Below, piece by piece: positions 45,519-56,511 of a stretch of DNA of 64,000 nucleotides (the first letter of the stretch is position 1; each line of letters starts with the position of its first letter). Under the pieces are notes generated by a model. It did no database searches. It saw only the letters and a list, made by a program, of their open reading frames with translations, and was not told the DNA's origin. The stretch is from sequence record LR756511.1; one strand, written 5' to 3'. A program made the translations under genes and the position numbers.

Positions 45519-45953
45519 TTACTTTGCCTGCAAACACATTTGATATATTTCCTCAATCATTCGCAATGTAGATTGAGAGAATACACTACAAGCCTCTTCA
45601 TGAACTGGATACCGAGCTTCACGGTAGTAGTTCTCCATTTCAGCATACACCAGACTGACAGTAGTAACTTCTTCCTTGGTCCACTGGTGACGTGGGCCAG
45701 TTTGCTTATGACAGAACACAGAATCAAGTTCTGGCTCTGGCATTGGCTCTGGTGCCGCATAACCCACCGCACGACCCTGTGAATCCCTTAACTTTCGTCG
45801 GATCACACGATTATGTGGCATTTTGCGATCCCATCGCTCCCATGCCGCCTTCTGATGTCTCGCCTTCGTAAGAAACTTGTTAATTTCTTTGAGCTTCTTA
45901 CAGGTTTCCCGATCACAAGGATGGAAACCCCACTTACTTTGAAACGCTGCCAT
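45519..45953 (-). CDS. Hypothetical protein
   Basis: Packed ORF. Confidence 0.6.
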   Translation of the reverse strand: MAAFQSKWGFHPCDRETCKKLKEINKFLTKARHQKAAWERWDRKMPHNRVIRRKLRDSQGRAVGYAAPEPMPEPELDSVFCHKQTGPRHQWTKEEVTTVSLVYAEMENYYREARYPVHEEACSVFSQSTLRMIEEIYQMCLQAK

Positions 45954-46801: not shown

Positions 46802-47115
46802 TTTTCTCCATTCTTCCATTTGTTAAAAAGTATTCTAAATTCTTCGTCTGTAACAAGCCCCATTGCTTGCTTATAGTAAAACGTTTCTTCAATGGGGATG
46901 TTTTCTACGGCACATTTAAGCCCCGTAAGATCAAGATTCTGTTCCTTGGCTTCATCAAGGATTTGCTTAAGTGTGAAACTATGACACAAATCCCACGCAT
47001 CAGACTTTGATCCGCCAAGAGCATTAGCGAATGCCATTGCACCATAACACGGTGCGCATTTTAGGCAAATAGCGTTCTTCACAGCGGCAGCAGTCGGCTT
47101 GAGATTAATCCCCAT
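46798..47115 (-). CDS. Hypothetical protein
   Basis: TAATG overlap with the Pth stop. Confidence 0.6.
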   Translation of the reverse strand: MGINLKPTAAAVKNAICLKCAPCYGAMAFANALGGSKSDAWDLCHSFTLKQILDEAKEQNLDLTGLKCAVENIPIEETFYYKQAMGLVTDEEFRILFNKWKNGEK

Positions 47116-47450
47116 TACGCAACTCCTTTCAAAAGTTGGTAGTTACGAAAAAACCGCCTTTGCTCACCGAAAATAACTTCGGTAGCTAAAGCAGTAGCTT
47201 CCCCGTTGCGGTCTGGTTCCGTGAAAACACGAAATTGAATACCAGCCGAAGCGAGTTTATCAGCAGACTTAAATAGCGCAGCTTCGTCCTTAACAGCAAG
47301 GACGATAAGATGTGGATGCTCTAAATCGTGGTCAAGAAAGGCTTTAGTGGCTTCGATACAGGCATGGGATGCCTGAACCACTTGAACGGAATGAGGAAGG
47401 TCTTTCCGAACAAAACAATACAGATACGGGGTTTCAACCTAGTGAGTCAT
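47115..47450 (-). CDS. Pth2-like peptidyl-tRNA hydrolase with an in-frame amber at codon 4
   Basis: YCFVRKDL...QVVQASHA, LIVLAVKDE, F.EPD, TALAT; ATG 47450 has AGGAG and an ATGA overlap; TAG at 47439-47441. Confidence 0.85.
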
Positions 47451-47746
47451 TTTTCTTCTCCTTGTTCTATAGTAGTGTTCTGAGCTTCTTTTCTCTTTTT
47501 GTATTCGTCAAATTCTTTGTTCATTTCCGCCGCTACACGACAATTTTCAGCGTGTAACCAACGATCCTGCCAACCAGGAGTCTTTTTCCTGTTATTATAT
47601 CGCTTCGCCATCGGCTTTAACTGAGCAAGCACTTGTTCAGGATCACCGAATGGGAAACAAGTGCAATCCATAAGCACTGCACCCAACTTCTTTTCTTCCA
47701 AACCAGGGAACAATTCTCTTACTTTATCTACGCAAATTTGGCACAC
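47447..47746 (-). CDS. Hypothetical protein
   Basis: MCQIC start; stop overlaps the Pth ATG. Confidence 0.6.
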   Translation of the reverse strand: MCQICVDKVRELFPGLEEKKLGAVLMDCTCFPFGDPEQVLAQLKPMAKRYNNRKKTPGWQDRWLHAENCRVAAEMNKEFDEYKKRKEAQNTTIEQGEEK

Positions 47747-47953
47747 TAGGAAAATCCTTTGGATTACTTCTTATGCCTACATTCTCTGCCCCAAGCTGCT
47801 CCGCTAACCACTTGGGGTCAATCTTCCGCATTGCCTTACCAGTTATTTTGATCTTTGGTAACGCTTTGCCAGTCACGTTGATTCGCATAACCCACTTTAC
47901 GCCGAAAAACCAGTTTGTCAAGCAGAATTTTTCCTTTTGTCCTAAATAGAAGT

Positions 47954-48415
47954 ATGCATACTTTCAATGAATTCATGCTTAGCAGACAGATTGATGTTCT
48001 AGCGGAAAGGTGCGTCGAGAAGAACATTCCTGTTGTTGAGTTTGTTCAATATTTAGAAGCGGGTCTTTTGGGCAGTATGGCGGGTGGCGCTGTTCGCGGT
48101 GGCGGATATGGTAGTTGGTTTGGTATGCCTGGAGCCGCTGTCGGCGCTGGCTTAGGTGCATTAGGCGGCGCAGCCAAGCATTTCTATAATCAATGGCAAG
48201 GGAATAAACAAGGACAGAATTTAGAGTTTAATAAGACTCAAGCCATCCAAGCTATTGAGAAACTTAGTAAACTACTACCAAATGACGCTCAAGGACAATT
48301 AAGCCAAATTATTTCTACCTTACAAGGTATTGGCGCACAACCACAAGTGCCGCAACCAAAACAAGTCTATAATCCAGCAATGGGTATGGCTCAAGGCTTG
48401 GCACAGGGTCAATAA
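47954..48415 (+). CDS. Gly-rich protein with a hydrophobic glycine-zipper segment, possible virion internal protein
   Basis: MHTFNEF start after TAAATA; GAAVGAGLGALGGAA; Q-rich tail. Confidence 0.65.
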   Translation: MHTFNEFMLSRQIDVLAERCVEKNIPVVEFVQYLEAGLLGSMAGGAVRGGGYGSWFGMPGAAVGAGLGALGGAAKHFYNQWQGNKQGQNLEFNKTQAIQAIEKLSKLLPNDAQGQLSQIISTLQGIGAQPQVPQPKQVYNPAMGMAQGLAQGQ

Positions 48416-48416
48416 A

Positions 48417-48716
48417 TTAGTCTTTCGGTGGAATATAGAACTCTTCGGCAAATGGCTTTGGCTTTACTTTAGGTTCTGGTCCACGGCCCATTAATTTGTC
48501 AAAATTAATGATTTTTTTGATATCAACCACTTCATCTGGTTCTACTGGATCAATAGGAAGTGGTTCTTGATCCCAAATGTGGAAATGTTTATAAGGTAGA
48601 ACCTTCTTTAGCTTTTCAACGAATGCTTCGGCCTTTTCAGCAGTAGAAAAAGCTGCCAGAGGAAAGTAGTGTGTATCCCCTGAGCAGCTTATCTCTTCTA
48701 CATGTACTTCCTTCAT
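48417..48716 (-). CDS. Hypothetical phage protein
   Basis: LAAFSTAEKAEAF motif. Confidence 0.55.
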   Translation of the reverse strand: MKEVHVEEISCSGDTHYFPLAAFSTAEKAEAFVEKLKKVLPYKHFHIWDQEPLPIDPVEPDEVVDIKKIINFDKLMGRGPEPKVKPKPFAEEFYIPPKD

Positions 48717-48727
48717 TGCAAACTCCG

Positions 48728-49561
48728 TTATGGAGGTGGAATGACAAGATCACCAGAAGTCAATGTGTATGGGACCGTTGTTATCTGGTCAGGTGTAGTG
48801 TTGGCTCCAGTATACGTGTATTGGATTTTTCTTGCCATATCACCTACCACAGAACCAGCAAAATATTCGATGATTTCTGTAATTCTCAAGTTTACATCAA
48901 GCGTAATCTTGGAGAAAGTATGTGTATTTGATCTGCCGTGTAGAAGCTCATAATCAGACTGAGGGGCAAGTGGATTCAATCCTGCTGCCGTTATTACAGC
49001 CGCATCTACTGGATTGAGTGGATTAAGCTCAATTAAAACGGAAGGCCCATCTGGAAAGACGAAACGATTATCAACAGTATAACGCTCGAAATACGTTGGG
49101 AATTCTACAACCTTAGCCTGATAATTGAATCTTAGTTTTTCTTCAGCCCCAGCATTGGTTACATAGATACGAACCGCTTGCTTCTGTCGCTTGCAACGGA
49201 TACAAACCCTGAAAGGACCGCCTGCACCCGTGCCGCCATGTGTCTTGTTGCTTATGTAAGCGGTAAAATTATCCGCAAAAAGTGCATTTGCGTTTAATAG
49301 TGCGGCAACTTCAACAGCGGTTGTTGCGGCTGGAATTGCACCAGCAACGTTCACGGCGATAGCAGTATAACCCTTACGCTCAGGATCATATGCTATGTTA
49401 ATGGTAAACGTATTGACTACGCTAAAATCGTAAGGCTCAGCATTGCCAGAAACCATGTCTGCGCCAGTGTTATTAAGATTGGCACCAACACTAAAAATGG
49501 CTTGCTGATCTATTGGCCAACTCTGTCTGAACTCTTCTCCAAATGGATTCTGGAAAAACAT
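48728..49561 (-). CDS. Putative virion structural protein
   Basis: Ala/Thr/Asn-rich, beta-strand-like composition; no family recognised. Confidence 0.5.
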   Translation of the reverse strand: MFFQNPFGEEFRQSWPIDQQAIFSVGANLNNTGADMVSGNAEPYDFSVVNTFTINIAYDPERKGYTAIAVNVAGAIPAATTAVEVAALLNANALFADNFTAYISNKTHGGTGAGGPFRVCIRCKRQKQAVRIYVTNAGAEEKLRFNYQAKVVEFPTYFERYTVDNRFVFPDGPSVLIELNPLNPVDAAVITAAGLNPLAPQSDYELLHGRSNTHTFSKITLDVNLRITEIIEYFAGSVVGDMARKIQYTYTGANTTPDQITTVPYTLTSGDLVIPPP

Positions 49562-49585
49562 TTACACCCCTTATATGCTTATTAT

Positions 49586-50131
49586 TTATATAGAGGGGAT
49601 AGGTTTTAATTTTCCAAGAGCCATTTTGGAAACCAACTCAAAACTAGGCCACGTTCCCCCTTGCGACGGATCAACCTGATTGAAATGATGCCGAATCCAC
49701 TTTACGTAATTCCTCCAAACCTCTCTATCGTCTAATATACAGGCTCCCAGGTAGACAATAAGACGGTTTGGCCGATGCTTTTCAGGGTCCAAAAAACCCA
49801 AAGCGGCATCTGAACCTACGGCTTGACAAGCTGCAATATAAGCAGTTGCAGAACTTCGGCAAACGCCCGCACGACAGCAAACGAGAAGCTTTTTCCGACC
49901 TTTGGCAAAATCCAAAGCGGATTGGATGTGGTATGCTCGCGGTGCTACGAAATCATCAAACTTGTAATGGTCGATATCATCCACTGGAAGATGAAGTGAT
50001 TCCAAGGCATGTTGCTGAACAAACTTTAATTCAGGCCACTCAGAAGGAGTATAGTAAATTATGTCATATTGCTTAGAGTGCCCTTCAACAAATCTCTCTA
50101 ACTCCTTATGGCCAAATATCTTAAGTTCCAT
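49586..50131 (-). CDS. PTP/DSP-like phosphatase
   Basis: LLVCCRAGVCRSSATA CX5R P-loop, PN..IV. Confidence 0.8.
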   Translation of the reverse strand: MELKIFGHKELERFVEGHSKQYDIIYYTPSEWPELKFVQQHALESLHLPVDDIDHYKFDDFVAPRAYHIQSALDFAKGRKKLLVCCRAGVCRSSATAYIAACQAVGSDAALGFLDPEKHRPNRLIVYLGACILDDREVWRNYVKWIRHHFNQVDPSQGGTWPSFELVSKMALGKLKPIPSI

Positions 50132-50843
50132 TTTTCTTTACCTTGTGCTTATATTTCTCTTCGGTTTTGATGTAATAAACATCCAATCCTAAACGATTAT
50201 TGAGTTTGTCGTCAATTTCGTTATATTGCTTTATTGTAGTCTGCCCATTGTAAATATCATGGCAACGAATCGCCTCTCCATTAAACCAACGAGTTATAGC
50301 TAATCCCTTATGATAAGAATGTTTGTGGCTATAAGCTGTTTGCTCATAAGGACTTGCTGAATCCTTTATAATATCATTGATGACAGGATTGGTGTCTCTG
50401 CCATTAATGTTGTAGATCATAATTTTTTCGATAGCGGTGGGAGGTATCTTTAGTAGATAGACGCAAACACCGCTTTGGGCAAGTGAAAGTTTCCACTTGT
50501 TTTTATAGTTGGCGAGATTTTCTAATATTTCTTTGCGTTGCTTTTCAAGAGCGGCGGGATTTCTGGTTCTTAGCTTGTTTATTCTCTGTATAAAAGCGGG
50601 AGATGGGGCTATCATATCCTGGTAAAGCGTATTAAGCTTTACGGATATAATGCCCCATCTCTCAGCTTCAGGTGGGCAAACGGATTTACAGAAGAAGCCT
50701 GCGTAAATATCAGTCAAGAAAACTGGCGGTTCCAAACCCTTTGACGGCGCTAACTTTGCAACATCTTCGGTTGTGCCGATGTAAAGGATTTTGTCATCCT
50801 GTTGCTTGGTGCAATCCTTGGATTTGGAAGCCGTTGCTTTCAT
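50121..50843 (-). CDS. Hypothetical protein
   Basis: 240 aa ORF. Confidence 0.65.
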   Translation of the reverse strand: MKATASKSKDCTKQQDDKILYIGTTEDVAKLAPSKGLEPPVFLTDIYAGFFCKSVCPPEAERWGIISVKLNTLYQDMIAPSPAFIQRINKLRTRNPAALEKQRKEILENLANYKNKWKLSLAQSGVCVYLLKIPPTAIEKIMIYNINGRDTNPVINDIIKDSASPYEQTAYSHKHSYHKGLAITRWFNGEAIRCHDIYNGQTTIKQYNEIDDKLNNRLGLDVYYIKTEEKYKHKVKKNGT

Positions 50844-51045
50844 TGGACGGATGTTCCTTCATTGATTGTATTTTACTCGGAACACCCCATGATTTAAAAC
50901 CATTGGGGTCCAGAGGCAACGCAGCCTCTGCAAGCATTCTTACTTCTTTGCAAATCAAATCTGTTGGCGCGGCCATTTCAAGTAGATCGCTTAGCCGCTT
51001 TGCCCTACCTTCCAACAGACCCATATGATACGCGCGTGCAGACAT
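50794..51045 (-). CDS. Hypothetical protein
   Basis: GAGGTGG ribosome-binding site. Confidence 0.45.
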   Translation of the reverse strand: MSARAYHMGLLEGRAKRLSDLLEMAAPTDLICKEVRMLAEAALPLDPNGFKSWGVPSKIQSMKEHPSNESNGFQIQGLHQATG

Positions 51046-51081
51046 CTTACCACCTCTTTTGGAGTTGTAAAGTCAAAAGTT

Positions 51082-52212
51082 TCAAACAGAGGAAGTTGCG
51101 GGACTATCATTCGGCCTTACTCCTTGCAGCGGAAGCGGGTTTATAAATTGCCCCAGCTTAACCAGAACCTCTTGAGCTTCTTTGTTCTGATTAAACACCT
51201 TCGACAATTCTTCGTTTTCCTTATCCAACAACTCGATCTTTTGCTCTAAGGAAGCTCTTTCCGCGTTGTTAGCCGCGATTCGTCTCGCAACGTCCGCTAA
51301 TTCCTGTAGCTTATCCTTCAAGCCGATAAGCATATCAGGAATGTTAATCTTTGGTTTTGGCGGGGTGGGCGGGGCGGATGGCGGGGGCGGTGCGTCCTTA
51401 TATTTCTCTAAGAAGCCACGCCCTTTATCTGTTAGTAAGTAACCGATCACCTTATCGCGTTCATTGACCCTCTCCATTAAATATTCACTTTTGACCAATT
51501 CCGTTAAGACCCGCGAAACCGCTGCCAGATGCGATCCGCGCCAATGACATTCGTGCTTTAGCGTTTGAGCGAATTGAACCCTGTTCTTGCAGAAATTAGT
51601 ATCAATTACCGACTTAACCTTCTTCAAAACATATAAGAGCTTGTCATGACTCTTAACCACGCCTTGAAGGTTAGCAAATTCAGGCCGCTCATCCTTAACG
51701 AATGTTTCTGGTTCAACAACTTCTTTCTTCTCTTCTTCTTTGATTTCAAGCCTTGTCACACTCACGCCATTAATATGTGGACGTTCGATTACAGTAGTCA
51801 TGGTCGTAGTAGGGACTTCCTTTTTTTCTTTCTGTTCCTGGCGGATCGTGCGACTGATGGACTTTTCGTTTGCTTTTAGCTGAGTAAATAAGCTTTTTGC
51901 GGAATACCCCGAACCTTGCGGGATAAGCAGTGTCATTTCGTAATCGCGGGTAGCATGAACGTCTGGTTTTACCCTAACTGAAACTCCATATGGCTTAAAT
52001 CCAACCATGCGAACAGGACGACTTTCGGCACTACAATGGCGTAACTTGTCAACCCGACATTCCCATTCGTAACCTTTAGTATATCCTGAACGTTTGAGCA
52101 GTAATTCCAGTAATTCACTGGTTTGTGCTGGCTCTTGCGCACCGCCAAAATGGTCCCCAGCGGTAAAAACCCTAACTCTAGGCTCAGCAAGAAGCTCCAT
52201 CGCCAACCCCAT
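51082..52212 (-). CDS. Hypothetical protein with winged-helix-like segment and C-terminal coiled coil
   Basis: VSRVLTELVKSEYL...GYLLTDKG; Pro linker; heptad tail. Confidence 0.7.
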   Translation of the reverse strand: MGLAMELLAEPRVRVFTAGDHFGGAQEPAQTSELLELLLKRSGYTKGYEWECRVDKLRHCSAESRPVRMVGFKPYGVSVRVKPDVHATRDYEMTLLIPQGSGYSAKSLFTQLKANEKSISRTIRQEQKEKKEVPTTTMTTVIERPHINGVSVTRLEIKEEEKKEVVEPETFVKDERPEFANLQGVVKSHDKLLYVLKKVKSVIDTNFCKNRVQFAQTLKHECHWRGSHLAAVSRVLTELVKSEYLMERVNERDKVIGYLLTDKGRGFLEKYKDAPPPPSAPPTPPKPKINIPDMLIGLKDKLQELADVARRIAANNAERASLEQKIELLDKENEELSKVFNQNKEAQEVLVKLGQFINPLPLQGVRPNDSPATSSV

Positions 52213-52242
52213 CTATCATTTTATTGTTGTTCCGCCTTACTT

Positions 52243-52270
52243 ATCTTACTGCAAATCCCTTCATTGTCAA
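52243..52270 (-). promoter_or_regulatory. Sigma70-like promoter
   Basis: TTGACA-N16-TAAGAT. Confidence 0.5.
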
Positions 52271-52304
52271 GAAGTTGGGGAAAACCGTCCAATCAAAATA
52301 AAAA

Positions 52305-52334
52305 AAAGGCTAGGAAAAAAATTCCCTAGCCTTT
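52305..52334 (-). terminator. Rho-independent terminator
   Basis: AAAGGCTAGG/CCTAGCCTTT stem followed by a T-run on the minus strand. Confidence 0.75.
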
Positions 52335-52352
52335 CGTGGTGTGAGAGTCGCT

Positions 52353-52571
52353 TTACTTTCGCTTTTTTTTCCGTTCTTCAGCCCTGTCTGCTGCTGGAGT
52401 TGAACGCTTTGCCGCAACCTTCATCGTCTTCGGCTTGGGTGGCTGTTCACGTTCAAGCTCATTCTCGGCATCAAGCCAGAATTGAACGCCATCCCCAGGC
52501 GGATAGCCAGCTTTTTCCCATTTTAAATAAGCTCTCTTTGCAATCTTCTCACGCCATTCGCACTCAGTCAT
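52353..52571 (-). CDS. DUF2934-like small protein
   Basis: EKIAKRAYLKWEKAG.P.G....FWLDAE.EL. Confidence 0.75.
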   Translation of the reverse strand: MTECEWREKIAKRAYLKWEKAGYPPGDGVQFWLDAENELEREQPPKPKTMKVAAKRSTPAADRAEERKKKRK

Positions 52572-52607
52572 TGCTTCTCCTATTTTGGTGGAACCCTTGA
52601 ATCATAA

Positions 52608-52678
52608 TGACCCCTGAGGGAATCGAACCCTCGTCAAAGGATTAAAAGTCCATTGCTTTACCACTAAGCTAAGGGGTC
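52608..52678 (-). tRNA. tRNA-Lys (UUU)
   Basis: Cloverleaf GACCCCT..AGCTTAGTGGTAAAGC..GGA-CTTTTAA-TCC..GAGGG-TTCGATT-CCCTC-AGGGGTC-A; CCA not encoded. Confidence 0.9.
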
Positions 52679-52690
52679 AATCGCCTTTAC

Positions 52691-52879
52691 CTAAGCATAC
52701 CACAATTCATTAATTGGCACGACTAAGACACGTTCAGCGGATGATTGGATGCCGCTACCTTGCACCTTGATAGTATCAATTTGGCAAGGGCCAGAATGAA
52801 CTTCTACTTTCATAGGAAGATTACCGAAACCTTCCTTTTCCAGTCCTTCCAATCGCTTACGCATTTCTGAAACGGTCAT
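52691..52879 (-). CDS. Hypothetical protein
   Basis: MTVSEMRKRLE start; ends in TAG before the tRNA. Confidence 0.55.
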   Translation of the reverse strand: MTVSEMRKRLEGLEKEGFGNLPMKVEVHSGPCQIDTIKVQGSGIQSSAERVLVVPINELWYA

Positions 52880-53271
52880 ACAACAACTTTCTGAGGCATC
52901 ACGCCCAACTCATTAGGTATAAACTCTTTGCCCTTAGAAATTCTAACAATCTCGGCATGAGTGGCACGATAGCCATATTCATGTATGATTACCGTGCCCC
53001 AAACCTTAATAGTACCTAAGATTAAACTGGAGCCATTATAATACCGCCTACGCAGTCTATGATCTTTAAAGGCATGTAAGCCAACACGATTCGTCTCTTT
53101 GGGCCTAGCCTGTGCCCTAACAACCTTGCCCAGCGCCCATTTGGTTCTGGCCCTGGTTCTGAACAGTGATTGAAGACCAACTTTCCAAGCTCGATAAGCC
53201 AATAAAGCTTTCTCTCTTGGAATTTCCACAATCCTTTTAACCTTGCCAAGATTACACATTTTATACTCCAA
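52876..53271 (-). CDS. Phage hypothetical protein, tandem paralog 2
   Basis: AYR.W...GL..F...GTI..WGTV..HE.GYRA.HAEI. Confidence 0.7.
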   Translation of the reverse strand: MEYKMCNLGKVKRIVEIPREKALLAYRAWKVGLQSLFRTRARTKWALGKVVRAQARPKETNRVGLHAFKDHRLRRRYYNGSSLILGTIKVWGTVIIHEYGYRATHAEIVRISKGKEFIPNELGVMPQKVVV

Positions 53272-53626
53272 CTGCTTCTAAATTAGGAAGATATTCTTTA
53301 CCTTTTGTAATTTTAACAATCTCGGCATGGGAAGCACGGTAGCCAGATTCATGAAAAACTACCGTGCCCCAAATCTTAATTGTGCCCATCATTGCCGTCT
53401 TCCACAACCCATTCTTTCTAGCGGCAGGCGATGTGAAACAATACAATCCATACTGATTAATGGCTGTGGGTTTGGCGTGTGTCCTAACCACTTTGCCAAG
53501 TCGCCATTTGGTTTTAGCTCTAACGCTACTTGTGGATTGCAACCCAATGTTCCAAGAACGATAAGCTAGAATAGCTTTATCTTGCGGAACTTCCACAACC
53601 TTTTTTACTTTGCCAAGAATACACAT
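53261..53626 (-). CDS. Phage hypothetical protein, tandem paralog 1
   Basis: Same motifs as 52876-53271. Confidence 0.7.
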   Translation of the reverse strand: MCILGKVKKVVEVPQDKAILAYRSWNIGLQSTSSVRAKTKWRLGKVVRTHAKPTAINQYGLYCFTSPAARKNGLWKTAMMGTIKIWGTVVFHESGYRASHAEIVKITKGKEYLPNLEAVGV

Positions 53627-54084
53627 TACTTTACGACGTATTTCACGCCGCCCACAATTAAAAAGTGAATGGTCCTATGATCCACTTGTTTGATCCTGTG
53701 CTTATCCGTTTCATCAAGGTCTTCAACCATGCTACGTCCAAGCAAAGGCTCAGGCTTAATCAAACGTCCACGGAGAGTACGCTCATTGCCATCAGCTTTA
53801 TCAAAAGAAACGGTAAATGGACGATTGTGAGAGCTAATGAGGATTTCAGCAGCTTCCGTCTTCGTTACCTTTTCTGTCTCCTCAAACTGATCGGCAGACA
53901 AAGCATTTACTACTAAATCACGACCAGTGATTCTAATGTCTTTGCTGTTCTTGTCAAGCGGAGTTACGATTAACTCTTCCCCGCTGTGATTGACGGTCTT
54001 GACCTTTACGTAATTGACAAAGGCCATCAAATCGTTGTTTTTTACTTTCGTCGGTTCAACATTGTTTACTTTAGTGTCTTTCAT
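53626..54084 (-). CDS. Protein with C-terminal WYL/Sm-like beta-barrel
   Basis: FTVSFDKADGNERTLRG. Confidence 0.6.
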   Translation of the reverse strand: MKDTKVNNVEPTKVKNNDLMAFVNYVKVKTVNHSGEELIVTPLDKNSKDIRITGRDLVVNALSADQFEETEKVTKTEAAEILISSHNRPFTVSFDKADGNERTLRGRLIKPEPLLGRSMVEDLDETDKHRIKQVDHRTIHFLIVGGVKYVVK

Positions 54085-54114
54085 AATTCCTCCTATTAGG
54101 TATATCGAGGAATT

Positions 54115-54143
54115 ATCTTAGACAGTAAAGTAAAATTTGTCAA
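54115..54143 (-). promoter_or_regulatory. Sigma70-like promoter
   Basis: TTGACA-N17-TAAGAT upstream of an AGGAGG ribosome-binding site. Confidence 0.65.
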
Positions 54144-54637
54144 GAAATATGCCACCAATACGGCAATTTTCCTGCCCTGTAATTATCCGCGTATTGTTTA
54201 TCGGTGCCTGAAAGCTTCCACCATTTATCCTTTGGCCGATTTGCACCGCCAAACGAGAATTTGCAAATGTAAACACGTTCTTCTAGATACGCTGTCCTTC
54301 CCCAAGCTTCATTATAAATTGCATCAATCTCTTTCCAGGTGAAATCAATCAATTTATCAAGTTGATCCTTGTCGATATGCTTGAAGATAGGATCAAAATT
54401 CTTTTCGGTAAAAAGAGCAGTTAATTGTTCCGTAGTAGGCTTTGGAGTTCGGTTTTCAAACCATTCACGTAATATAGCCGCAGGCACATACATAGCATCC
54501 GCAGCAGCATCACCATTGTAATAGTCTTCAATTGTATCGCGGTTTGGGATGGCGTTTATAAGACTACCGCCCTCATGTCCACTTGGCTTGTTCTCATAGT
54601 CAATGCCGCCACTACAATTACATTTCCACCAACCCAT
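54140..54637 (-). CDS. Hypothetical protein
   Basis: Abuts the OGFr-domain gene. Confidence 0.6.
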   Translation of the reverse strand: MGWWKCNCSGGIDYENKPSGHEGGSLINAIPNRDTIEDYYNGDAAADAMYVPAAILREWFENRTPKPTTEQLTALFTEKNFDPIFKHIDKDQLDKLIDFTWKEIDAIYNEAWGRTAYLEERVYICKFSFGGANRPKDKWWKLSGTDKQYADNYRAGKLPYWWHIS

Positions 54638-55141
54638 TTAATTCTCCTTAATCGCCTTCGTCCAATAGGCGAATGAGTTTTCAGAAACTAAATTTTCCGT
54701 TTCGTGCAGTTCCAGCAAGAAATTATAAAGCCGTTGAGCAAGGTCTTCTCTTCCCAATAGCTTTAATGAAGTCAAGCAACGTGTAATGCGGAGCCAATTA
54801 TGATTAATCTGGTTCCAGCAATAACGCGCTCGATCTTCGAAATTTTCCGCTTTATAGACTTTCTGGCCATCTGTGTTAAGGCCAAGAAAGCGTAGGAAGC
54901 GGTGGAATGAGTACGAAAGGTTAGCCTGCAACGTTTCACTCTGTTTAAACAGACTGATTTCTTCGTCTGTTAGGAGTGGAGCGTCAGGATTAAAGTTGGA
55001 GGGTTCTTTAAGCGGGAACAGCCACTGCACCCACGAATGATCGAATTCCAGCCAGTCGTCATCTTCATCCTGAATCTGGAATAGATATCGTCCGTCGATA
55101 TCAGGGTGATACCCGCTATAGAAGTTACAGATTTCGCTCAT
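54638..55141 (-). CDS. OGFr_N (opioid growth factor receptor) domain protein
   Basis: LE..H.WVQWLFP...S.FNP.AP.L, F.RFL.FLG, NHN.LRITRCL.SL..LG. Confidence 0.88.
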   Translation of the reverse strand: MSEICNFYSGYHPDIDGRYLFQIQDEDDDWLEFDHSWVQWLFPLKEPSNFNPDAPLLTDEEISLFKQSETLQANLSYSFHRFLRFLGLNTDGQKVYKAENFEDRARYCWNQINHNWLRITRCLTSLKLLGREDLAQRLYNFLLELHETENLVSENSFAYWTKAIKEN

Positions 55142-55463
55142 ATTGCTCTAAAAAGTGATTATAAGCGTTTTCAAACGCTTTTGTACTATCGGTCTTGACT
55201 AGTACAGCATCGACTGGCACTTGAAAGTCATCGTTGCCGATGGAGATTTCAATGCAGCTTTTGCTGTTAACTCTAACGATGTGGTTCGTCGCTAGAGAGT
55301 TTTTGAAATACGTTTCTACTTGCGTGTTAATTACATCAAGCATGGACTGTTGCCACATCACGGCAACGCTGCGGTGATGGAGGAGAAGTTTGAAGTATTT
55401 GTTTCTATAGTAATTTGCCGCCCGCGCCGCCAGGATAAATAGAAACGACAATGCGAGGATCAT
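55125..55463 (-). CDS. Hypothetical protein with N-terminal membrane anchor
   Basis: GGGGAG ribosome-binding site; hydrophobic N-terminus. Confidence 0.55.
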   Translation of the reverse strand: MILALSFLFILAARAANYYRNKYFKLLLHHRSVAVMWQQSMLDVINTQVETYFKNSLATNHIVRVNSKSCIEISIGNDDFQVPVDAVLVKTDSTKAFENAYNHFLEQYERNL

Positions 55464-55479
55464 GAAGCTCCCCTTTGTA

Positions 55480-55564
55480 ACTTTGTAGCAACTTCAAACT
55501 AGGCGACTTTGCCACAACTTCACAACTGCGTAGGTAACGCAGCTACTGCGTAAATAACGCAGCT
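55480..55564. repeat. Two pairs of short direct repeats downstream of the suppressor tRNA
   Basis: ACTTTG..CAACTTCA.ACT x2 (55480-55500, 55506-55527); ACTGCGTA..TAACGCAGCT x2 (55525-55544, 55545-55564), each of the latter a hairpin. Confidence 0.7.
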
Positions 55565-55588
55565 TTTCTGGCGTCATTGCCCTGTCAG

Positions 55589-55661
55589 CGCTTGCGGCGG
55601 GAGTCGAACCCGCAACCAATCAGTTTTAGAGACTGTCGCTCTGCCATTGAGCTACGCAAGC
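55589..55661 (-). tRNA. Amber-suppressor tRNA (anticodon CUA), tRNA-Trp-like body
   Basis: GCTTGCG-TA-GCTC-AATGGCA-GAGC-G-ACAGT-CT[CTA]AA-ACTGA-TTGGTT-GCGGG-TTCGACT-CCCGC-CGCAAGC-G. Confidence 0.88.
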
Positions 55662-55669
55662 AAGCGCCT

Positions 55670-55987
55670 TTAAAGCGAATCAATCAACTCTTTGGATGCT
55701 TCCTTGCCGAGAAGGTCCACCAACTTCTTAGCCGTGCGAACCAATTCCGCAACACCACTGAGAGGATTTGCGGGCTTGGGAGCAGGAGCGACAAGCGACG
55801 GGGCGGTAGATGCGGTTCGCTTGGCGGCTTCCTTCCTCATCTCGTTTCGCCTGTTGTGGAAACTCGACTGAGGGAGCGGAATCCTGTAGGTGCGGAAGAA
55901 CTCATTCTTGGCTTGCGCGTAAGTGGTATCCAAACCCTTCTTTTCCAGAAACTCACGAATCTTCGGCGTCAACACCGACTCTGCCAT
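55670..55987 (-). CDS. Small basic protein
   Basis: AGGAG ribosome-binding site; C-terminal AKKLVDLLG.....LID.L helix. Confidence 0.65.
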   Translation of the reverse strand: MAESVLTPKIREFLEKKGLDTTYAQAKNEFFRTYRIPLPQSSFHNRRNEMRKEAAKRTASTAPSLVAPAPKPANPLSGVAELVRTAKKLVDLLGKEASKELIDSL

Positions 55988-55999
55988 GACACACTCTCC

Positions 56000-56218
56000 T
56001 TACTTTAGGCGGTGAACAATCCGCCCCTTTGTTAAGTCATAAGGTGAAATTTCAACTTCAACCTTATCACCAGGAATCACCCGAATAAAATTCTGACGCA
56101 TCTTACCGCAAATGTGCGCCAGAACAGTATGTCCGTTGTCCAATTTTACTCGAAAACTTGTATTCGGCAAGGATTCCAATACTTGCCCTTGAACCGAAAT
56201 TCCATCCGTCTTAGCCAT
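56000..56218 (-). CDS. infA: Translation initiation factor IF-1
   Basis: [46 protein letters not shown]. Confidence 0.95.
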
Positions 56219-56511
56219 TAGTCCTCTACCTTAGTTACTTTCCCAAAGATACCATTCTTGCCAACCCAGCCATTTATATGACCGTGATTATTAGAAATTT
56301 GGTATCTCTCGCCTTGGATCGCCGTCAATAAATGAACGTAATAGCGACCCTTAACCTTACAAAAAACCACATCGCCCTTATTCAATTCCGAAACATCTGG
56401 ACTAATGGTTATCAATTGTCCAGAATTAATCCGTGGCTTCATGGACGATCCGCGTGGACGGCACTGAACCGTCTCACCTTTAATCAATTTATCCGCAAAA
56501 TGCCTATTCAC
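56218..56511 (-). CDS. S24/S26-like peptidase domain protein
   Basis: GSSMKP, GDVVF, YYVHL, G.I.GKV. Confidence 0.65.

What the first reader, a model, noticed from the sequence alone, without database searches (positions are those of the whole stretch)
47115..56218. Candidate amber-gated translation circuit: suppressor tRNA plus amber-interrupted peptidyl-tRNA hydrolase, near IF-1
Seen: a CUA-anticodon tRNA, and a Pth2-like gene with TAG at codon 4, which is the only amber-interrupted gene I found; tRNA-Lys and infA are nearby, and TAG is a normal stop elsewhere. Established: very short ORFs (lambda bar minigenes) cause peptidyl-tRNA drop-off, which is the substrate of Pth. Inference: full-length Pth is made only when the suppressor outcompetes RF1, giving a timing switch or a sensor of termination stress, while non-readthrough events release MTH-peptidyl-tRNA. 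I know of no description of this exact circuit.
Basis: partly seen in the sequence, partly recalled or inferred. Interest (0 to 1): 0.92.

Follow-up and report, generated by a model that had tools for sequence, protein, structure and literature searches.

The report
Suppressor tRNA gates a phage hydrolase gene
A huge phage carries an amber-suppressor tRNA and a Pth2-like hydrolase gene that starts ATG-ACT-CAC-TAG; about a hundred related phages, several of them cultured, keep the same pairing with stop codon and anticodon always matching, which names a conserved client for the so far unexplained suppressor tRNAs of standard-code jumbo phages.

Summary
The window is record 124001-188000 of LR756511.1, a 595-kb uncultured phage.

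- **The gene.** On the minus strand, AAGGAG, then ATG ACT CAC TAG, then 107 codons of a Pth2-fold protein. Its first beta-strand lies between the TAG and the first later start codon.
- **Relatives.** Of 123 distinct homologous loci, 97 have an in-frame stop at codon 2-9 and/or in a surface loop. Fifteen have two.
- **Pairing with the tRNA.** The stop is TAG where a tRNA-CUA lies nearby (64 loci), TGA with tRNA-UCA (2, plus L045) and TAA with tRNA-UUA (1). There are no mismatches. The tRNA is on the same strand in 72 of 73 cases, at a median distance of 904 nt.
- **Genetic code.** These phages otherwise use the standard code.
- **Cultured carriers.** GAP32, CBB, Serratia BF, fHe-Yen9-03, Acinetobacter ME3, RsoM2USA and Salmonella Arash. 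Their annotations truncate, split or miss the gene.

The best reading is a suppressor-dependent translational gate. The purpose of the hydrolase is inferred, not shown. IF-1 and tRNA-Lys are not part of the module. I found no prior description.

The parts
55588..55661 (-). Suppressor tRNA with anticodon CUA. Class I cloverleaf, anticodon loop C-U-CUA-A-A, discriminator G, no encoded CCA.
   Evidence: ARAGORN; Rfam RF00005 at 65 bits; sequence; acceptor stem and discriminator. It is the only stop-anticodon tRNA among 63 tRNAs in the 595-kb genome.
47458..47463 (-). Shine-Dalgarno AAGGAG, 7 nt upstream of the leader ATG.
   Evidence: Read directly. An SD-like motif precedes the leader ATG in 75 of 90 homologous loci. 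No SD-like motif precedes GTG 47381.
47442..47450 (-). Three-codon leader ATG ACT CAC (Met-Thr-His). The ATG overlaps the TGA stop (47449-47447) of the upstream ORF.
   Evidence: Leaders of 1-8 codons, most often 2, occur in 90 homologous loci. MTH, MEH, MSH and MGH occur in the nearest relatives.
47439..47441 (-). Gating amber codon TAG, followed by G (a purine at +4).
   Evidence: The closest relative also has TAG here. The +4 base is a purine in 88 of 90 gating stops against 201 of 340 terminator TAGs, Fisher p=4e-15.
47115..47438 (-). Pth2-fold domain: 107 sense codons (47438-47118) plus TAA (47117-47115). Beta-strand 1 is residues 5-11, upstream of the first later start codon (GTG 47381, residue 20).
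   Evidence: Pfam PTH2; profile hits to solved Pth2 structures; AlphaFold2 model, pLDDT 93.2; Foldseek top 13 PDB hits are all Pth2, TM 0.66-0.75; invariant Q22, H25, A26, F72, E74, D76, T82.
45519..45953 (-). Possible accessory gene: a 144-aa ORF of unknown function (motif WGxHPC ... W.RW.RK.PHNR). It lies directly downstream of the Pth2-like gene in most of the 31 loci that have it, and 1.5 kb downstream here.
   Evidence: Neighbour clustering. No Pfam or PHROG hit. Whether it belongs to the module is uncertain.
47447..47746 (-). Upstream 99-aa ORF whose TGA overlaps the leader ATG (ATGA). This suggests translational coupling in this phage and its closest relative. It is context, not a conserved part.
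   Evidence: No Pfam or PHROG hit.

Best explanation
This is a two-part translational gate. The phage encodes an amber-suppressor tRNA (CUA) and a Pth2-fold tRNA-ester hydrolase paralog whose mRNA carries a UAG three codons after a strong SD-AUG.

Ribosomes start at AUG 47450. At UAG, either host RF1 ends synthesis after Met-Thr-His, or the phage tRNA inserts an amino acid and the 111-residue protein is made. Output therefore needs transcription of the gene AND an expressed, processed and charged suppressor tRNA, and it scales with suppression efficiency. Relatives with two UAGs would respond more steeply.

The stop sits in the N-terminal tail, and in relatives also in surface loops, where any inserted residue is tolerated. 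It is followed by a purine, the context that classically favours suppression over release.

Supported by comparative evidence: the gate and its tRNA partner.

Inferred: the protein hydrolyses peptidyl- or aminoacyl-tRNA esters, and its dose is tied to suppressor activity. The coupling could mitigate the side products of read-through (drop-off and non-stop stalls), or it could limit the charged suppressor as negative feedback.
For: 1. **Anatomy.** SD, ATG, two codons, TAG, then the domain in the same frame. There is no ATG, GTG or TTG for 19 codons after the TAG.
2. **Truncation would break the fold.** Beta-strand 1 and the start of helix 1 lie before GTG 47381.
3. **Conservation.** 97 of 123 distinct loci at 32-86% identity carry an in-frame stop. 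90 have the clear leader form, 15 also have a second TAG (14 in the loop before (D/E)xHPHL, one in the EPD loop) and 3 have only an internal TAG at a third position.
4. **Linkage.** 30 of 35 gated loci with at least 9 kb on both sides have a suppressor tRNA within 9 kb. 72 of 73 are on the same strand, at a median distance of 904 nt.
5. **Covariation.** 64 TAG with CUA, 2 TGA with UCA (plus L045), 1 TAA with UUA, and no mismatches. The exact probability is 7e-6. The TGA forms sit in two separate clades among TAG forms.
6. **Context.** The +4 base is a purine at 88 of 90 gating stops against 59% at true TAG terminators.
7. **Standard code elsewhere**.
8. **Pth2 fold with conserved Q, H, D, T positions**.
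9. **Cultured phages.** GAP32, CBB, BF, fHe-Yen9-03, ME3, RsoM2USA and Arash show the same architecture. A CUA tRNA was seen 0.45-3.5 kb away in GAP32, BF, ME3 and Arash. For RsoM2USA its paper reports one CUA tRNA in the genome. The flanks fetched for CBB and fHe-Yen9-03 (400 nt) were too short to tell.
Against: There is no experimental evidence of read-through, of the inserted amino acid or of enzyme activity.

- In this window the tRNA is 8.1 kb from the gene, further than in most relatives.
- 5 of 35 long gated loci show no suppressor within 9-10 kb. It may lie elsewhere in those genomes.
- 26 loci are ungated, 13 of them still next to a suppressor, so gating is not obligatory.
- Suppressor discriminator bases vary (A 42, U 20, G 17), so no single charging identity can be named.
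- The Gly-Lys loop after beta-1 of canonical Pth2 is absent, so the chemistry may differ.
- TAG terminators are not followed by extra back-up stops. There is thus no sign that the genome has adapted to strong global read-through.
Confidence: 0.8

Rival explanations
1. Same gate, but the enzyme is a negative regulator. It deacylates or hydrolyses the charged (or peptidyl-) suppressor tRNA. More suppression then makes more hydrolase, which lowers suppression. This would hold read-through at a set point, in the way RF2 controls its own synthesis through an in-frame UGA.
For: - The sensor codon lies in the regulator's own mRNA and matches the linked tRNA.
- The gene stays next to suppressor tRNAs even when ungated (13 of 26 ungated loci).
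- GAP32 also has a canonical PTH2 (GAP32_382), so this paralog probably has a special role.
- Two-TAG versions would sharpen the response.
- TAG remains a common terminator with no back-up stops, so unchecked suppression should be costly.
Against: There are no data on substrate. Ungated members would then repress the suppressor constitutively. Nothing in the sequence shows specificity for one tRNA.
Confidence: 0.3
2. Same gate, used as a timer or checkpoint for a counter-defence enzyme. The hydrolase clears N-blocked or damaged aminoacyl-/peptidyl-tRNAs made by host tRNA-targeting toxins (acetyltransferase toxins, anticodon nucleases). It is produced only once phage tRNA genes are expressed.
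For: PTH2 of jumbo phages has been proposed to free peptidyl-tRNA during ribosome rescue after tRNA cleavage (PMC7824862). Pth detoxifies acetylated aminoacyl-tRNA (title and abstract of PMC9241777). tmRNA genes lie beside the module in several loci (L040, L132, L133, L074, L076).
Against: tmRNA is nearby in only 5 of 46 long loci. The model does not explain why the gate must be a suppressor tRNA, nor the strict stop/anticodon matching better than the main model does.
Confidence: 0.15
3. The leader is an independent mini-ORF. The hydrolase is made by termination-reinitiation or a non-canonical start, and the suppressor tRNA neighbourhood is coincidental or serves other genes.
For: SD-AUG-1 to 7 codons-stop resembles lambda bar-type minigenes. 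Three loci have AUG-UAG directly. A few loci have an ATG soon after the stop (L156, L094).
Against: - Most loci have no start codon between the stop and beta-strand 1.
- Internal TAGs in loops, 18 loci at three different positions, cannot be bypassed by reinitiation.
- Stop type covaries with the neighbouring anticodon.
Confidence: 0.04
4. The phage reassigns TAG genome-wide (code 15-like), and this is just one of many recoded genes.
For: A CUA tRNA is the hallmark of TAG-recoded phages. Gene callers translated some homologs with Q at the TAG.
Against: - TAG-joined ORF pairs are no commoner than TGA-joined ones.
- Reading TAG as sense adds no more ORF coverage than reading TGA or TAA as sense, in the genome and in 52 long loci.
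- 19% of long ORFs end in TAG.
- Only six weak further candidates exist. The five I scanned with Pfam gave no domain spanning the TAG.
Confidence: 0.03
5. Pseudogene, sequencing error or transient nonsense polymorphism.
For: A single C-to-T change would turn CAG into TAG. Database proteins read MEHQV at the equivalent place.
Against: That Q is itself a TAG in the DNA. The stop is kept in about 100 loci while the neighbouring codons change. The downstream domain is under clear constraint.
Confidence: 0.01

Closest known systems
Stop-codon reassignment in phages with suppressor tRNAs (code 15 TAG to Gln, code 4 TGA to Trp; Lak megaphages, crAss-like phages)
   Same: A phage-encoded tRNA with a stop anticodon decodes in-frame stops in phage genes while the host uses the standard code. 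It has been proposed as a regulator of gene expression (10.1101/2021.08.26.457843; PMC11210395).
   Different: There, tens to hundreds of genes are recoded, mostly late and lysis genes, coding density under code 11 is low and TAG is lost as a terminator. Here one small gene carries 1-2 positionally conserved stops, the tRNA is physically linked to it, and TAG stays a normal terminator.
prfB (RF2) autoregulation through an early in-frame UGA
   Same: An in-frame stop early in the mRNA of a translation factor makes that factor's synthesis depend on how the same stop is decoded (own knowledge).
   Different: prfB bypasses the stop by a +1 frameshift, and the sensed molecule is the product itself. 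Here the frame is unchanged, the sensed molecule is a separately encoded tRNA, and feedback by the product is only a hypothesis.
Synthetic AND gate built from the supD amber suppressor and a T7 RNA polymerase gene with two amber codons (Anderson, Voigt and Arkin 2007; own knowledge)
   Same: The logic is the same: output protein needs both the mRNA and the suppressor tRNA. Two amber codons tighten the gate, as in the 15 natural loci with two TAGs.
   Different: That gate is engineered. This one is natural, conserved and widespread, and its output is a small tRNA-ester hydrolase.
Canonical PTH2 of jumbo phages, archaea and eukaryotes (PF01981)
   Same: The fold is the same and the VQxxHA and acidic-loop...T motifs are conserved. 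[quoted passage not shown]
   Different: This is a divergent paralog with no pairwise BLAST similarity to GAP32_382. It lacks the Gly-Lys loop after beta-1, is about 105 aa long, is stop-gated and is tRNA-linked. PHROGs holds it as a truncated family of unknown function (phrog_34073).
Lambda bar minigenes and Pth
   Same: SD + AUG + one or a few codons + stop. Termination on such very short ORFs is slow and prone to peptidyl-tRNA drop-off, which is the substrate of Pth (own knowledge).
   Different: bar minigenes stand alone and act by sequestering tRNA. Here the mini-ORF is in frame with a conserved domain that has no start codon of its own.
Programmed read-through in RNA phages and retroviruses (Q-beta A1 protein, MLV gag-pol)
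   Same: A fraction of ribosomes reads a stop as sense to make a longer protein (own knowledge).
   Different: Those systems use host near-cognate tRNAs and RNA context at the 3' end of a complete gene. This one uses a dedicated cognate suppressor at the 5' end, so the unread product is only a 1-8 residue peptide.

Membership tests
PTH2 peptidyl-tRNA hydrolase (PF01981) | Sequence match to the family model above its curated threshold | tested here: met
   28 bits against a cut-off of 23, E=2.8e-6, covering profile positions 3-90 of 115. The family profile hits solved Pth2 chains 24bt_A and 2zv3_A at E about 1e-5.
PTH2 peptidyl-tRNA hydrolase (PF01981) | Pth2 alpha/beta fold | tested here: met
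   AlphaFold2 model with pLDDT 93.2 and pTM 0.86. The Foldseek top 13 PDB matches are all Pth2 (2zv3, 3erj, 1wn2, 1xty, 1q7s, 1rlk), TM 0.66-0.75, probability 1.00.
PTH2 peptidyl-tRNA hydrolase (PF01981) | Conserved active-site motifs | tested here: inconclusive
   Q22, H25, A26 (VQxxHA) and E74, D76, T82 are invariant in 32 sequences and align with the AQxxHA and D-A-G...T regions of Pth2. The two-residue Gly-Lys insertion after beta-1 is missing.
PTH2 peptidyl-tRNA hydrolase (PF01981) | Hydrolysis of peptidyl-tRNA or N-acyl-aminoacyl-tRNA | not testable with these tools
   Needs an enzyme assay or complementation of E. coli pth(ts).
Nonsense-suppressor tRNA | Canonical tRNA cloverleaf with a stop anticodon in a 7-nt loop, U33 and a purine at position 37 | tested here: met
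   ARAGORN and Rfam at 65 bits. The loop reads C-U-CUA-A-A. 51 of 82 related suppressors have CU-CUA-AA.
Nonsense-suppressor tRNA | A cognate in-frame stop in a client gene | tested here: met
   Stop type matches the anticodon in all 67 gated loci that show a suppressor, with no mismatches. The switches are independent on the tree.
Nonsense-suppressor tRNA | Aminoacylation and decoding of the stop in vivo | not testable with these tools
   Discriminator and acceptor pairs vary between loci, so the identity could not be assigned.
Genome-wide TAG reassignment (code 15-like phage) | Many genes with in-frame TAG and low coding density under code 11 that recovers when TAG is read as sense | tested here: not met
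Genome-wide TAG reassignment (code 15-like phage) | TAG abandoned as a terminator | tested here: not met
   97 of 521 long ORFs in the genome and 340 of 1757 in related loci end in TAG.
prfB-type autoregulatory recoding | Early in-frame stop bypassed by a +1 frameshift | tested here: not met
   The domain is in the zero frame with the leader ATG. The +1 frame does not encode it.
prfB-type autoregulatory recoding | The product changes decoding of its own sensor codon | not testable with these tools
   This is the hypothesis of rival 1.
Lambda bar-type minigene | SD + AUG + one to a few codons + stop | tested here: met
Lambda bar-type minigene | A free-standing mini-ORF with no in-frame continuation | tested here: not met
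   A conserved domain follows in frame, without a start codon.
Pyrrolysine system (ARAGORN's label 'tRNA-Pyl') | The atypical tRNA-Pyl architecture together with pylS/pylBCD genes | tested here: not met
   The tRNA fits the general tRNA model over its full length, with a normal D-loop and T-loop. The label only reflects the CUA anticodon. pyl genes were not searched for.

The most novel reading that the evidence does not exclude
The module is a natural, portable device for setting read-through. The Pth2-like enzyme would act specifically on the charged or peptidyl form of its linked suppressor tRNA, so that stop-codon read-through during infection is held at a set level by feedback through the enzyme's own UAG codon or codons. 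It could also be the first-client stage from which genome-wide stop-codon reassignment in phages evolves.
Probability: 0.25. Interest if true: 0.95.

Novelty: new variant of a known kind. Interest (0 to 1): 0.88.

Why it matters
- **It names a client for unexplained tRNAs.** Suppressor tRNAs are annotated in many standard-code jumbo phages, but their targets have been called unidentifiable or left open. See XacN1, PMC5852040, and RsoM2USA, PMC8504454. This finding names a conserved, genetically linked client gene.
- **The evidence is of an unusual kind.** It shows compensatory change between a codon in one gene and the anticodon of a neighbouring tRNA gene.
- **It corrects annotation.** The gene is truncated, split or absent in the GenBank records of GAP32, CBB, BF, fHe-Yen9-03, RsoM2USA and Arash. 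In ME3 the annotated CDS starts after the TAG. It is held as a truncated 77-aa family in PHROGs.
- **It is a natural counterpart of a synthetic design.** Amber-suppressor AND gates have been built in the laboratory.
- **It may be a stepping stone.** It could be an intermediate on the road to stop-codon reassignment.
- **It can be tested now.** Several cultured phages carry it, and heterologous tests in E. coli K-12 are straightforward.

Tried and rejected
- **General TAG recoding.** Tested three ways. Rejected.
- **Other stop-gated genes in the 595-kb genome.** The leader-type scan found only this gene convincingly. Six internal TAG candidates had coding-like sequence on both sides. Pfam on five of them showed window 30050 to be two separate genes (a hexapeptide transferase and DUF6166). 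The other four gave no domain spanning the TAG. Record -43822 was not scanned.
- **Back-up stops after TAG terminators.** No enrichment against TGA.
- **IF-1 and tRNA-Lys as parts of the module.** Rejected, at 2 of 46 and 4 of 46 long loci. tmRNA is only occasional, at 5 of 46.
- **Amino-acid identity of the suppressor.** The nearest tRNAs of the phage itself are Arg-UCU (0.69) and Gln-CUG (0.68), which is not decisive. Discriminators vary across loci.
- **Canonical Pth2 in this genome.** None found by tblastn with GAP32_382.
- **Pfam and PHROG on the flanking ORFs and the conserved partner.** Nothing found.
- **Cellular genomes.** Only 4 loci in 185,579 species genomes, 3 of them MAG contigs. 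All 3 MAG contigs carry the full module and are probably phage contigs.
- **Literature.** Eight searches and nine look-ups in papers found nothing that links PTH2 with suppressor tRNAs or in-frame stops. Absence from this library is not proof of absence.

Full report
**Where the window comes from.** The window is identical to positions 124001-188000 of LR756511.1, an unannotated 595,163-bp 'uncultured phage' record. I fetched the whole record in pieces. It holds 63 tRNA genes and a tmRNA. Only one tRNA has a stop anticodon: the CUA tRNA of this finding.

**The observation.** ARAGORN and the Rfam tRNA model (65 bits) both find a normal class I tRNA with anticodon CUA at 55588-55661 on the minus strand.
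- At 47463-47115, also on the minus strand, the sequence reads AAGGAG, seven bases, ATG ACT CAC TAG, then 107 sense codons and TAA.
- The ATG overlaps the stop of the upstream ORF (ATGA).
- The piece after the TAG matches Pfam PTH2 above threshold from its sixth residue.
- An AlphaFold2 model built on 32 homologs has pLDDT 93. Its 13 best PDB matches are all Pth2 structures.
- The first beta-strand (residues 5-11) and the start of helix 1 lie between the TAG and the next possible start codon, GTG 47381. That GTG has no Shine-Dalgarno motif and is what gene callers chose (protein P0002).
- A GTG-started protein would therefore lack a core strand.

**Is it an accident?** No.
- A protein search with the post-TAG piece found 31 relatives. 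Several read 'MEHQV...' where the window reads 'MTH*V...'.
- The DNA of the closest one (86% identity) is ATG GAA CAC TAG GTT. The Q is a gene caller's code-15 translation of a TAG.
- I then collected loci from IMG/VR (64), metagenomes (80) and GenBank phages, and read the DNA upstream of every match.
- After removing duplicates there are 123 distinct loci, and 97 carry an in-frame stop.
- In 90 the architecture is the same as here: an SD-like motif (75 of 90), ATG, 0-7 further codons (most often one), a stop, then 1-12 codons before beta-strand 1.
- Fifteen of the leader-gated loci have a second TAG. In fourteen it lies in the loop before the conserved (D/E)xHPHL strand, and in one (L123) in the EPD loop.
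- Three loci lack the leader stop but have a TAG in a different loop.
- All gating positions are in the N-terminal tail or in loops of the model.

**The link to the tRNA.** ARAGORN on the flanks shows a stop-anticodon tRNA close to the gene in most loci.
- Among gated loci with at least 9 kb on both sides, 30 of 35 have one within 9 kb.
- 72 of 73 suppressors are on the same strand as the gene. The median distance is 904 nt, and 38 lie within 1 kb.
- 75 of the 311 tRNAs in these flanks have anticodon CUA.
- The stop type matches the anticodon every time: 64 TAG with CUA, 2 TGA with UCA (L043, L076) and 1 TAA with UUA (L048). L045, which has a ten-codon leader ending in TGA, is also next to a UCA tRNA. 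There are no mismatches (exact probability 7e-6).
- On a tree of the domain, L043 and L076 sit in separate clades among TAG-gated relatives. The codon and the anticodon therefore changed together at least twice.
- This is compensatory covariation between an mRNA codon and a tRNA gene. It is the strongest argument that the tRNA decodes that codon.

**Context of the stop.** The base after the gating stop is A or G in 88 of 90 loci and never T. After genuine TAG terminators in the same loci it is A or G in only 59% (Fisher p=4e-15). From classical E. coli genetics (own knowledge: Bossi 1983; Miller and Albertini 1983), a 3' purine favours suppression of UAG. Very short nascent chains are also released slowly by release factors (own knowledge, minigene literature). 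That would give the tRNA a kinetic advantage at codon 2-4. These two points are inference.

**Not a recoded genome.**
- TAG-joined ORF pairs are no more frequent than TGA-joined ones.
- Reading TAG as sense does not raise ORF coverage more than reading TGA or TAA as sense, in the genome or in 52 long loci.
- 19% of long ORFs end in TAG.
- A scan for the leader architecture in all 2211 open frames of the genome gives this gene as the only convincing case.
- Six internal TAGs had coding-like sequence on both sides and no nearby start. Pfam on five of them showed two separate genes in one case and nothing diagnostic in the rest.
- TAG terminators are not backed up by extra stops.

**What is not part of it.** IF-1 is near the gene in only 2 of 46 long loci, tRNA-Lys(UUU) in 4 and tmRNA in 5. 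These are neighbours in this lineage, not components. A 115-150-aa ORF of unknown function (WGxHPC...PHNR) follows the gene in 31 loci. In the window it is at 45519-45953. It may be an accessory.

**Cultured phages.** The same architecture is present in:
- Cronobacter phage GAP32 (ATG GCA CAA TAG; its annotated Sup-tRNA has anticodon CUA and lies 3.1 kb downstream),
- Pectobacterium phage CBB,
- Serratia phage BF (MTH*; tRNA-Sup 3.5 kb downstream),
- Yersinia phage fHe-Yen9-03,
- Acinetobacter phage ME3 (CUA tRNA about 450 nt upstream),
- Ralstonia phage RsoM2USA,
- Salmonella phage Arash (a CUA tRNA 1.3 kb downstream, labelled tRNA-Phe in the record).

In those records the gene is truncated (GAP32_397, CBB_406), split (Arash), starts after the TAG (ME3_195) or is not annotated (BF, fHe-Yen9-03, RsoM2USA). 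PHROGs holds a 77-residue truncated family of unknown function. RaK2 has an ungated copy. XacN1 and RAS14 have the domain fused to an upstream domain without a stop. GAP32 also has a canonical PTH2 gene, so the gated gene is a specialised paralog. In 185,579 species genomes the family appears only four times. Three of those are MAG contigs that carry the full module.

**How it most likely works.**
- Supported by comparative evidence: an early in-frame stop, matched and linked to a suppressor tRNA, is under selection in this gene family. Full-length protein should therefore require decoding by that tRNA in competition with RF1 (or RF2 for the UGA and UAA forms).
- Inferred: output rises with suppressor activity, and more steeply with two stops. 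Failed attempts cost only a 1-8-residue peptide.
- Inferred: the product is a tRNA-ester hydrolase whose amount is thereby tied to suppressor activity.
- Two purposes fit this. One is mitigation of the side products of read-through. The other is negative feedback on the charged suppressor, which I rate at 0.3. I cannot separate them.
- A counter-defence role, with the tRNA acting as a timer, is a third possibility.
- The varied discriminator bases of the tRNAs, and the placement of the stops at tolerant positions, suggest that the identity of the inserted amino acid does not matter.

**Comparison with what is known.**
- It shares the phage suppressor tRNA with code-15 and code-4 phages, but fails their defining features.
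- It shares the early sensor stop with prfB, but involves no frameshift.
- It shares the SD-AUG-short ORF with lambda bar minigenes, but is followed in frame by a domain.
- Its logic is that of the synthetic supD/T7 two-amber AND gate.

**Prior literature.**
- The XacN1 paper states that targets of its CUA tRNAs could not be identified.
- The RsoM2USA and phiKp24 papers leave the role of their suppressor tRNAs open.
- A comparative study of jumbo phages lists PTH2 without any mention of suppressors.
- The stop-recoding papers do not mention it.
- I found no description of this pairing in eight searches. That is not proof that none exists.

**Verdict.** The physiological role is open. I rate it a new variant of translational recoding and regulation, of high interest, and directly testable.

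Noticed in passing
window 45519-45953 (-); 31 related loci, e.g. L014 +367, L035 +320: A conserved 115-150-aa ORF of unknown function (motif WG(F/Y/W)(H/Y)PC ... W.RW.RK.PHNR) lies on the same strand, directly after the Pth2-like gene in most of these loci. It has no Pfam or PHROG hit.
   Followed up: partly
L159 (XacN1 ORF364), L171 (RAS14), L018, L041, L095, L102, L124: In one clade the Pth2-like domain is fused to a roughly 180-aa N-terminal domain with a WHDIGKP (HD-like) motif (phrog_14850, unknown function). These copies have no in-frame stop and no nearby suppressor tRNA.
   Followed up: partly
L162 13214-13642 (GAP32_382) against L162 20001-20318: GAP32 carries both a canonical PTH2 gene and the stop-gated paralog 6.4 kb apart. 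The two show no pairwise BLAST similarity. LR756511.1 has only the gated paralog.
   Followed up: yes
L040 10795-11300; L132 8560-9080; L133; L074; L076; L054; L056: tmRNA genes, some permuted, lie beside the suppressor tRNA and Pth2-like pair in several phages. LR756511.1 has its own tmRNA (tag ANPEFAMAA) at record 341280-341632.
   Followed up: partly
L006 40614-40689 (record 290614-290689); L043 3606-3683; L051 10892-10971: ARAGORN reports tRNA-like genes with four-base anticodons (gaaa, tttg, ccgg). They could be frameshift-suppressor-like tRNAs or prediction artefacts.
   Followed up: no
window 54638-55141 (-): A 167-aa phage ORF matches the Pfam OGFr_N family (opioid growth factor receptor conserved region), E=5.5e-26. 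This is an unexpected family for a phage.
   Followed up: no
window 52876-53271 (-) and 53261-53626 (-): Two adjacent paralogous ORFs (131 and 121 aa, both starting with ...C(N/I)LGKVK(R/K)(I/V)VE(I/V)P...) form a tandem duplication between tRNA-Lys and the tRNA-CUA region.
   Followed up: no
window 56218-56511 (-) and 56000-56218 (-): An S24-like peptidase fragment ORF (PF00717, E=1.3e-7) ends exactly where infA starts. IF-1 accompanies the module only in the close relatives L013 and L024.
   Followed up: partly
L160 3801-3872 (Salmonella phage Arash, OQ632216): A tRNA annotated as tRNA-Phe in the record is read by ARAGORN as anticodon CUA. The gated gene is split in the record into gp85c and gp84c ('peptidyl-tRNA hydrolase').
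   Followed up: partly
LR756511.1 record positions +23665, +18101, +78987, -516005, -43822: In-frame TAGs with coding-like sequence on both sides and no start codon within 15 codons. They could be read-through extensions. At -516005 the upstream piece is a D12 adenine methyltransferase. Pfam on four of them gave nothing decisive, and -43822 was not scanned.
   Followed up: partly
L060 9842-9916 and L131 8597-8673: UUA (ochre) suppressor tRNAs lie next to ungated copies of the gene. No in-frame TAA was seen in those copies.
   Followed up: partly
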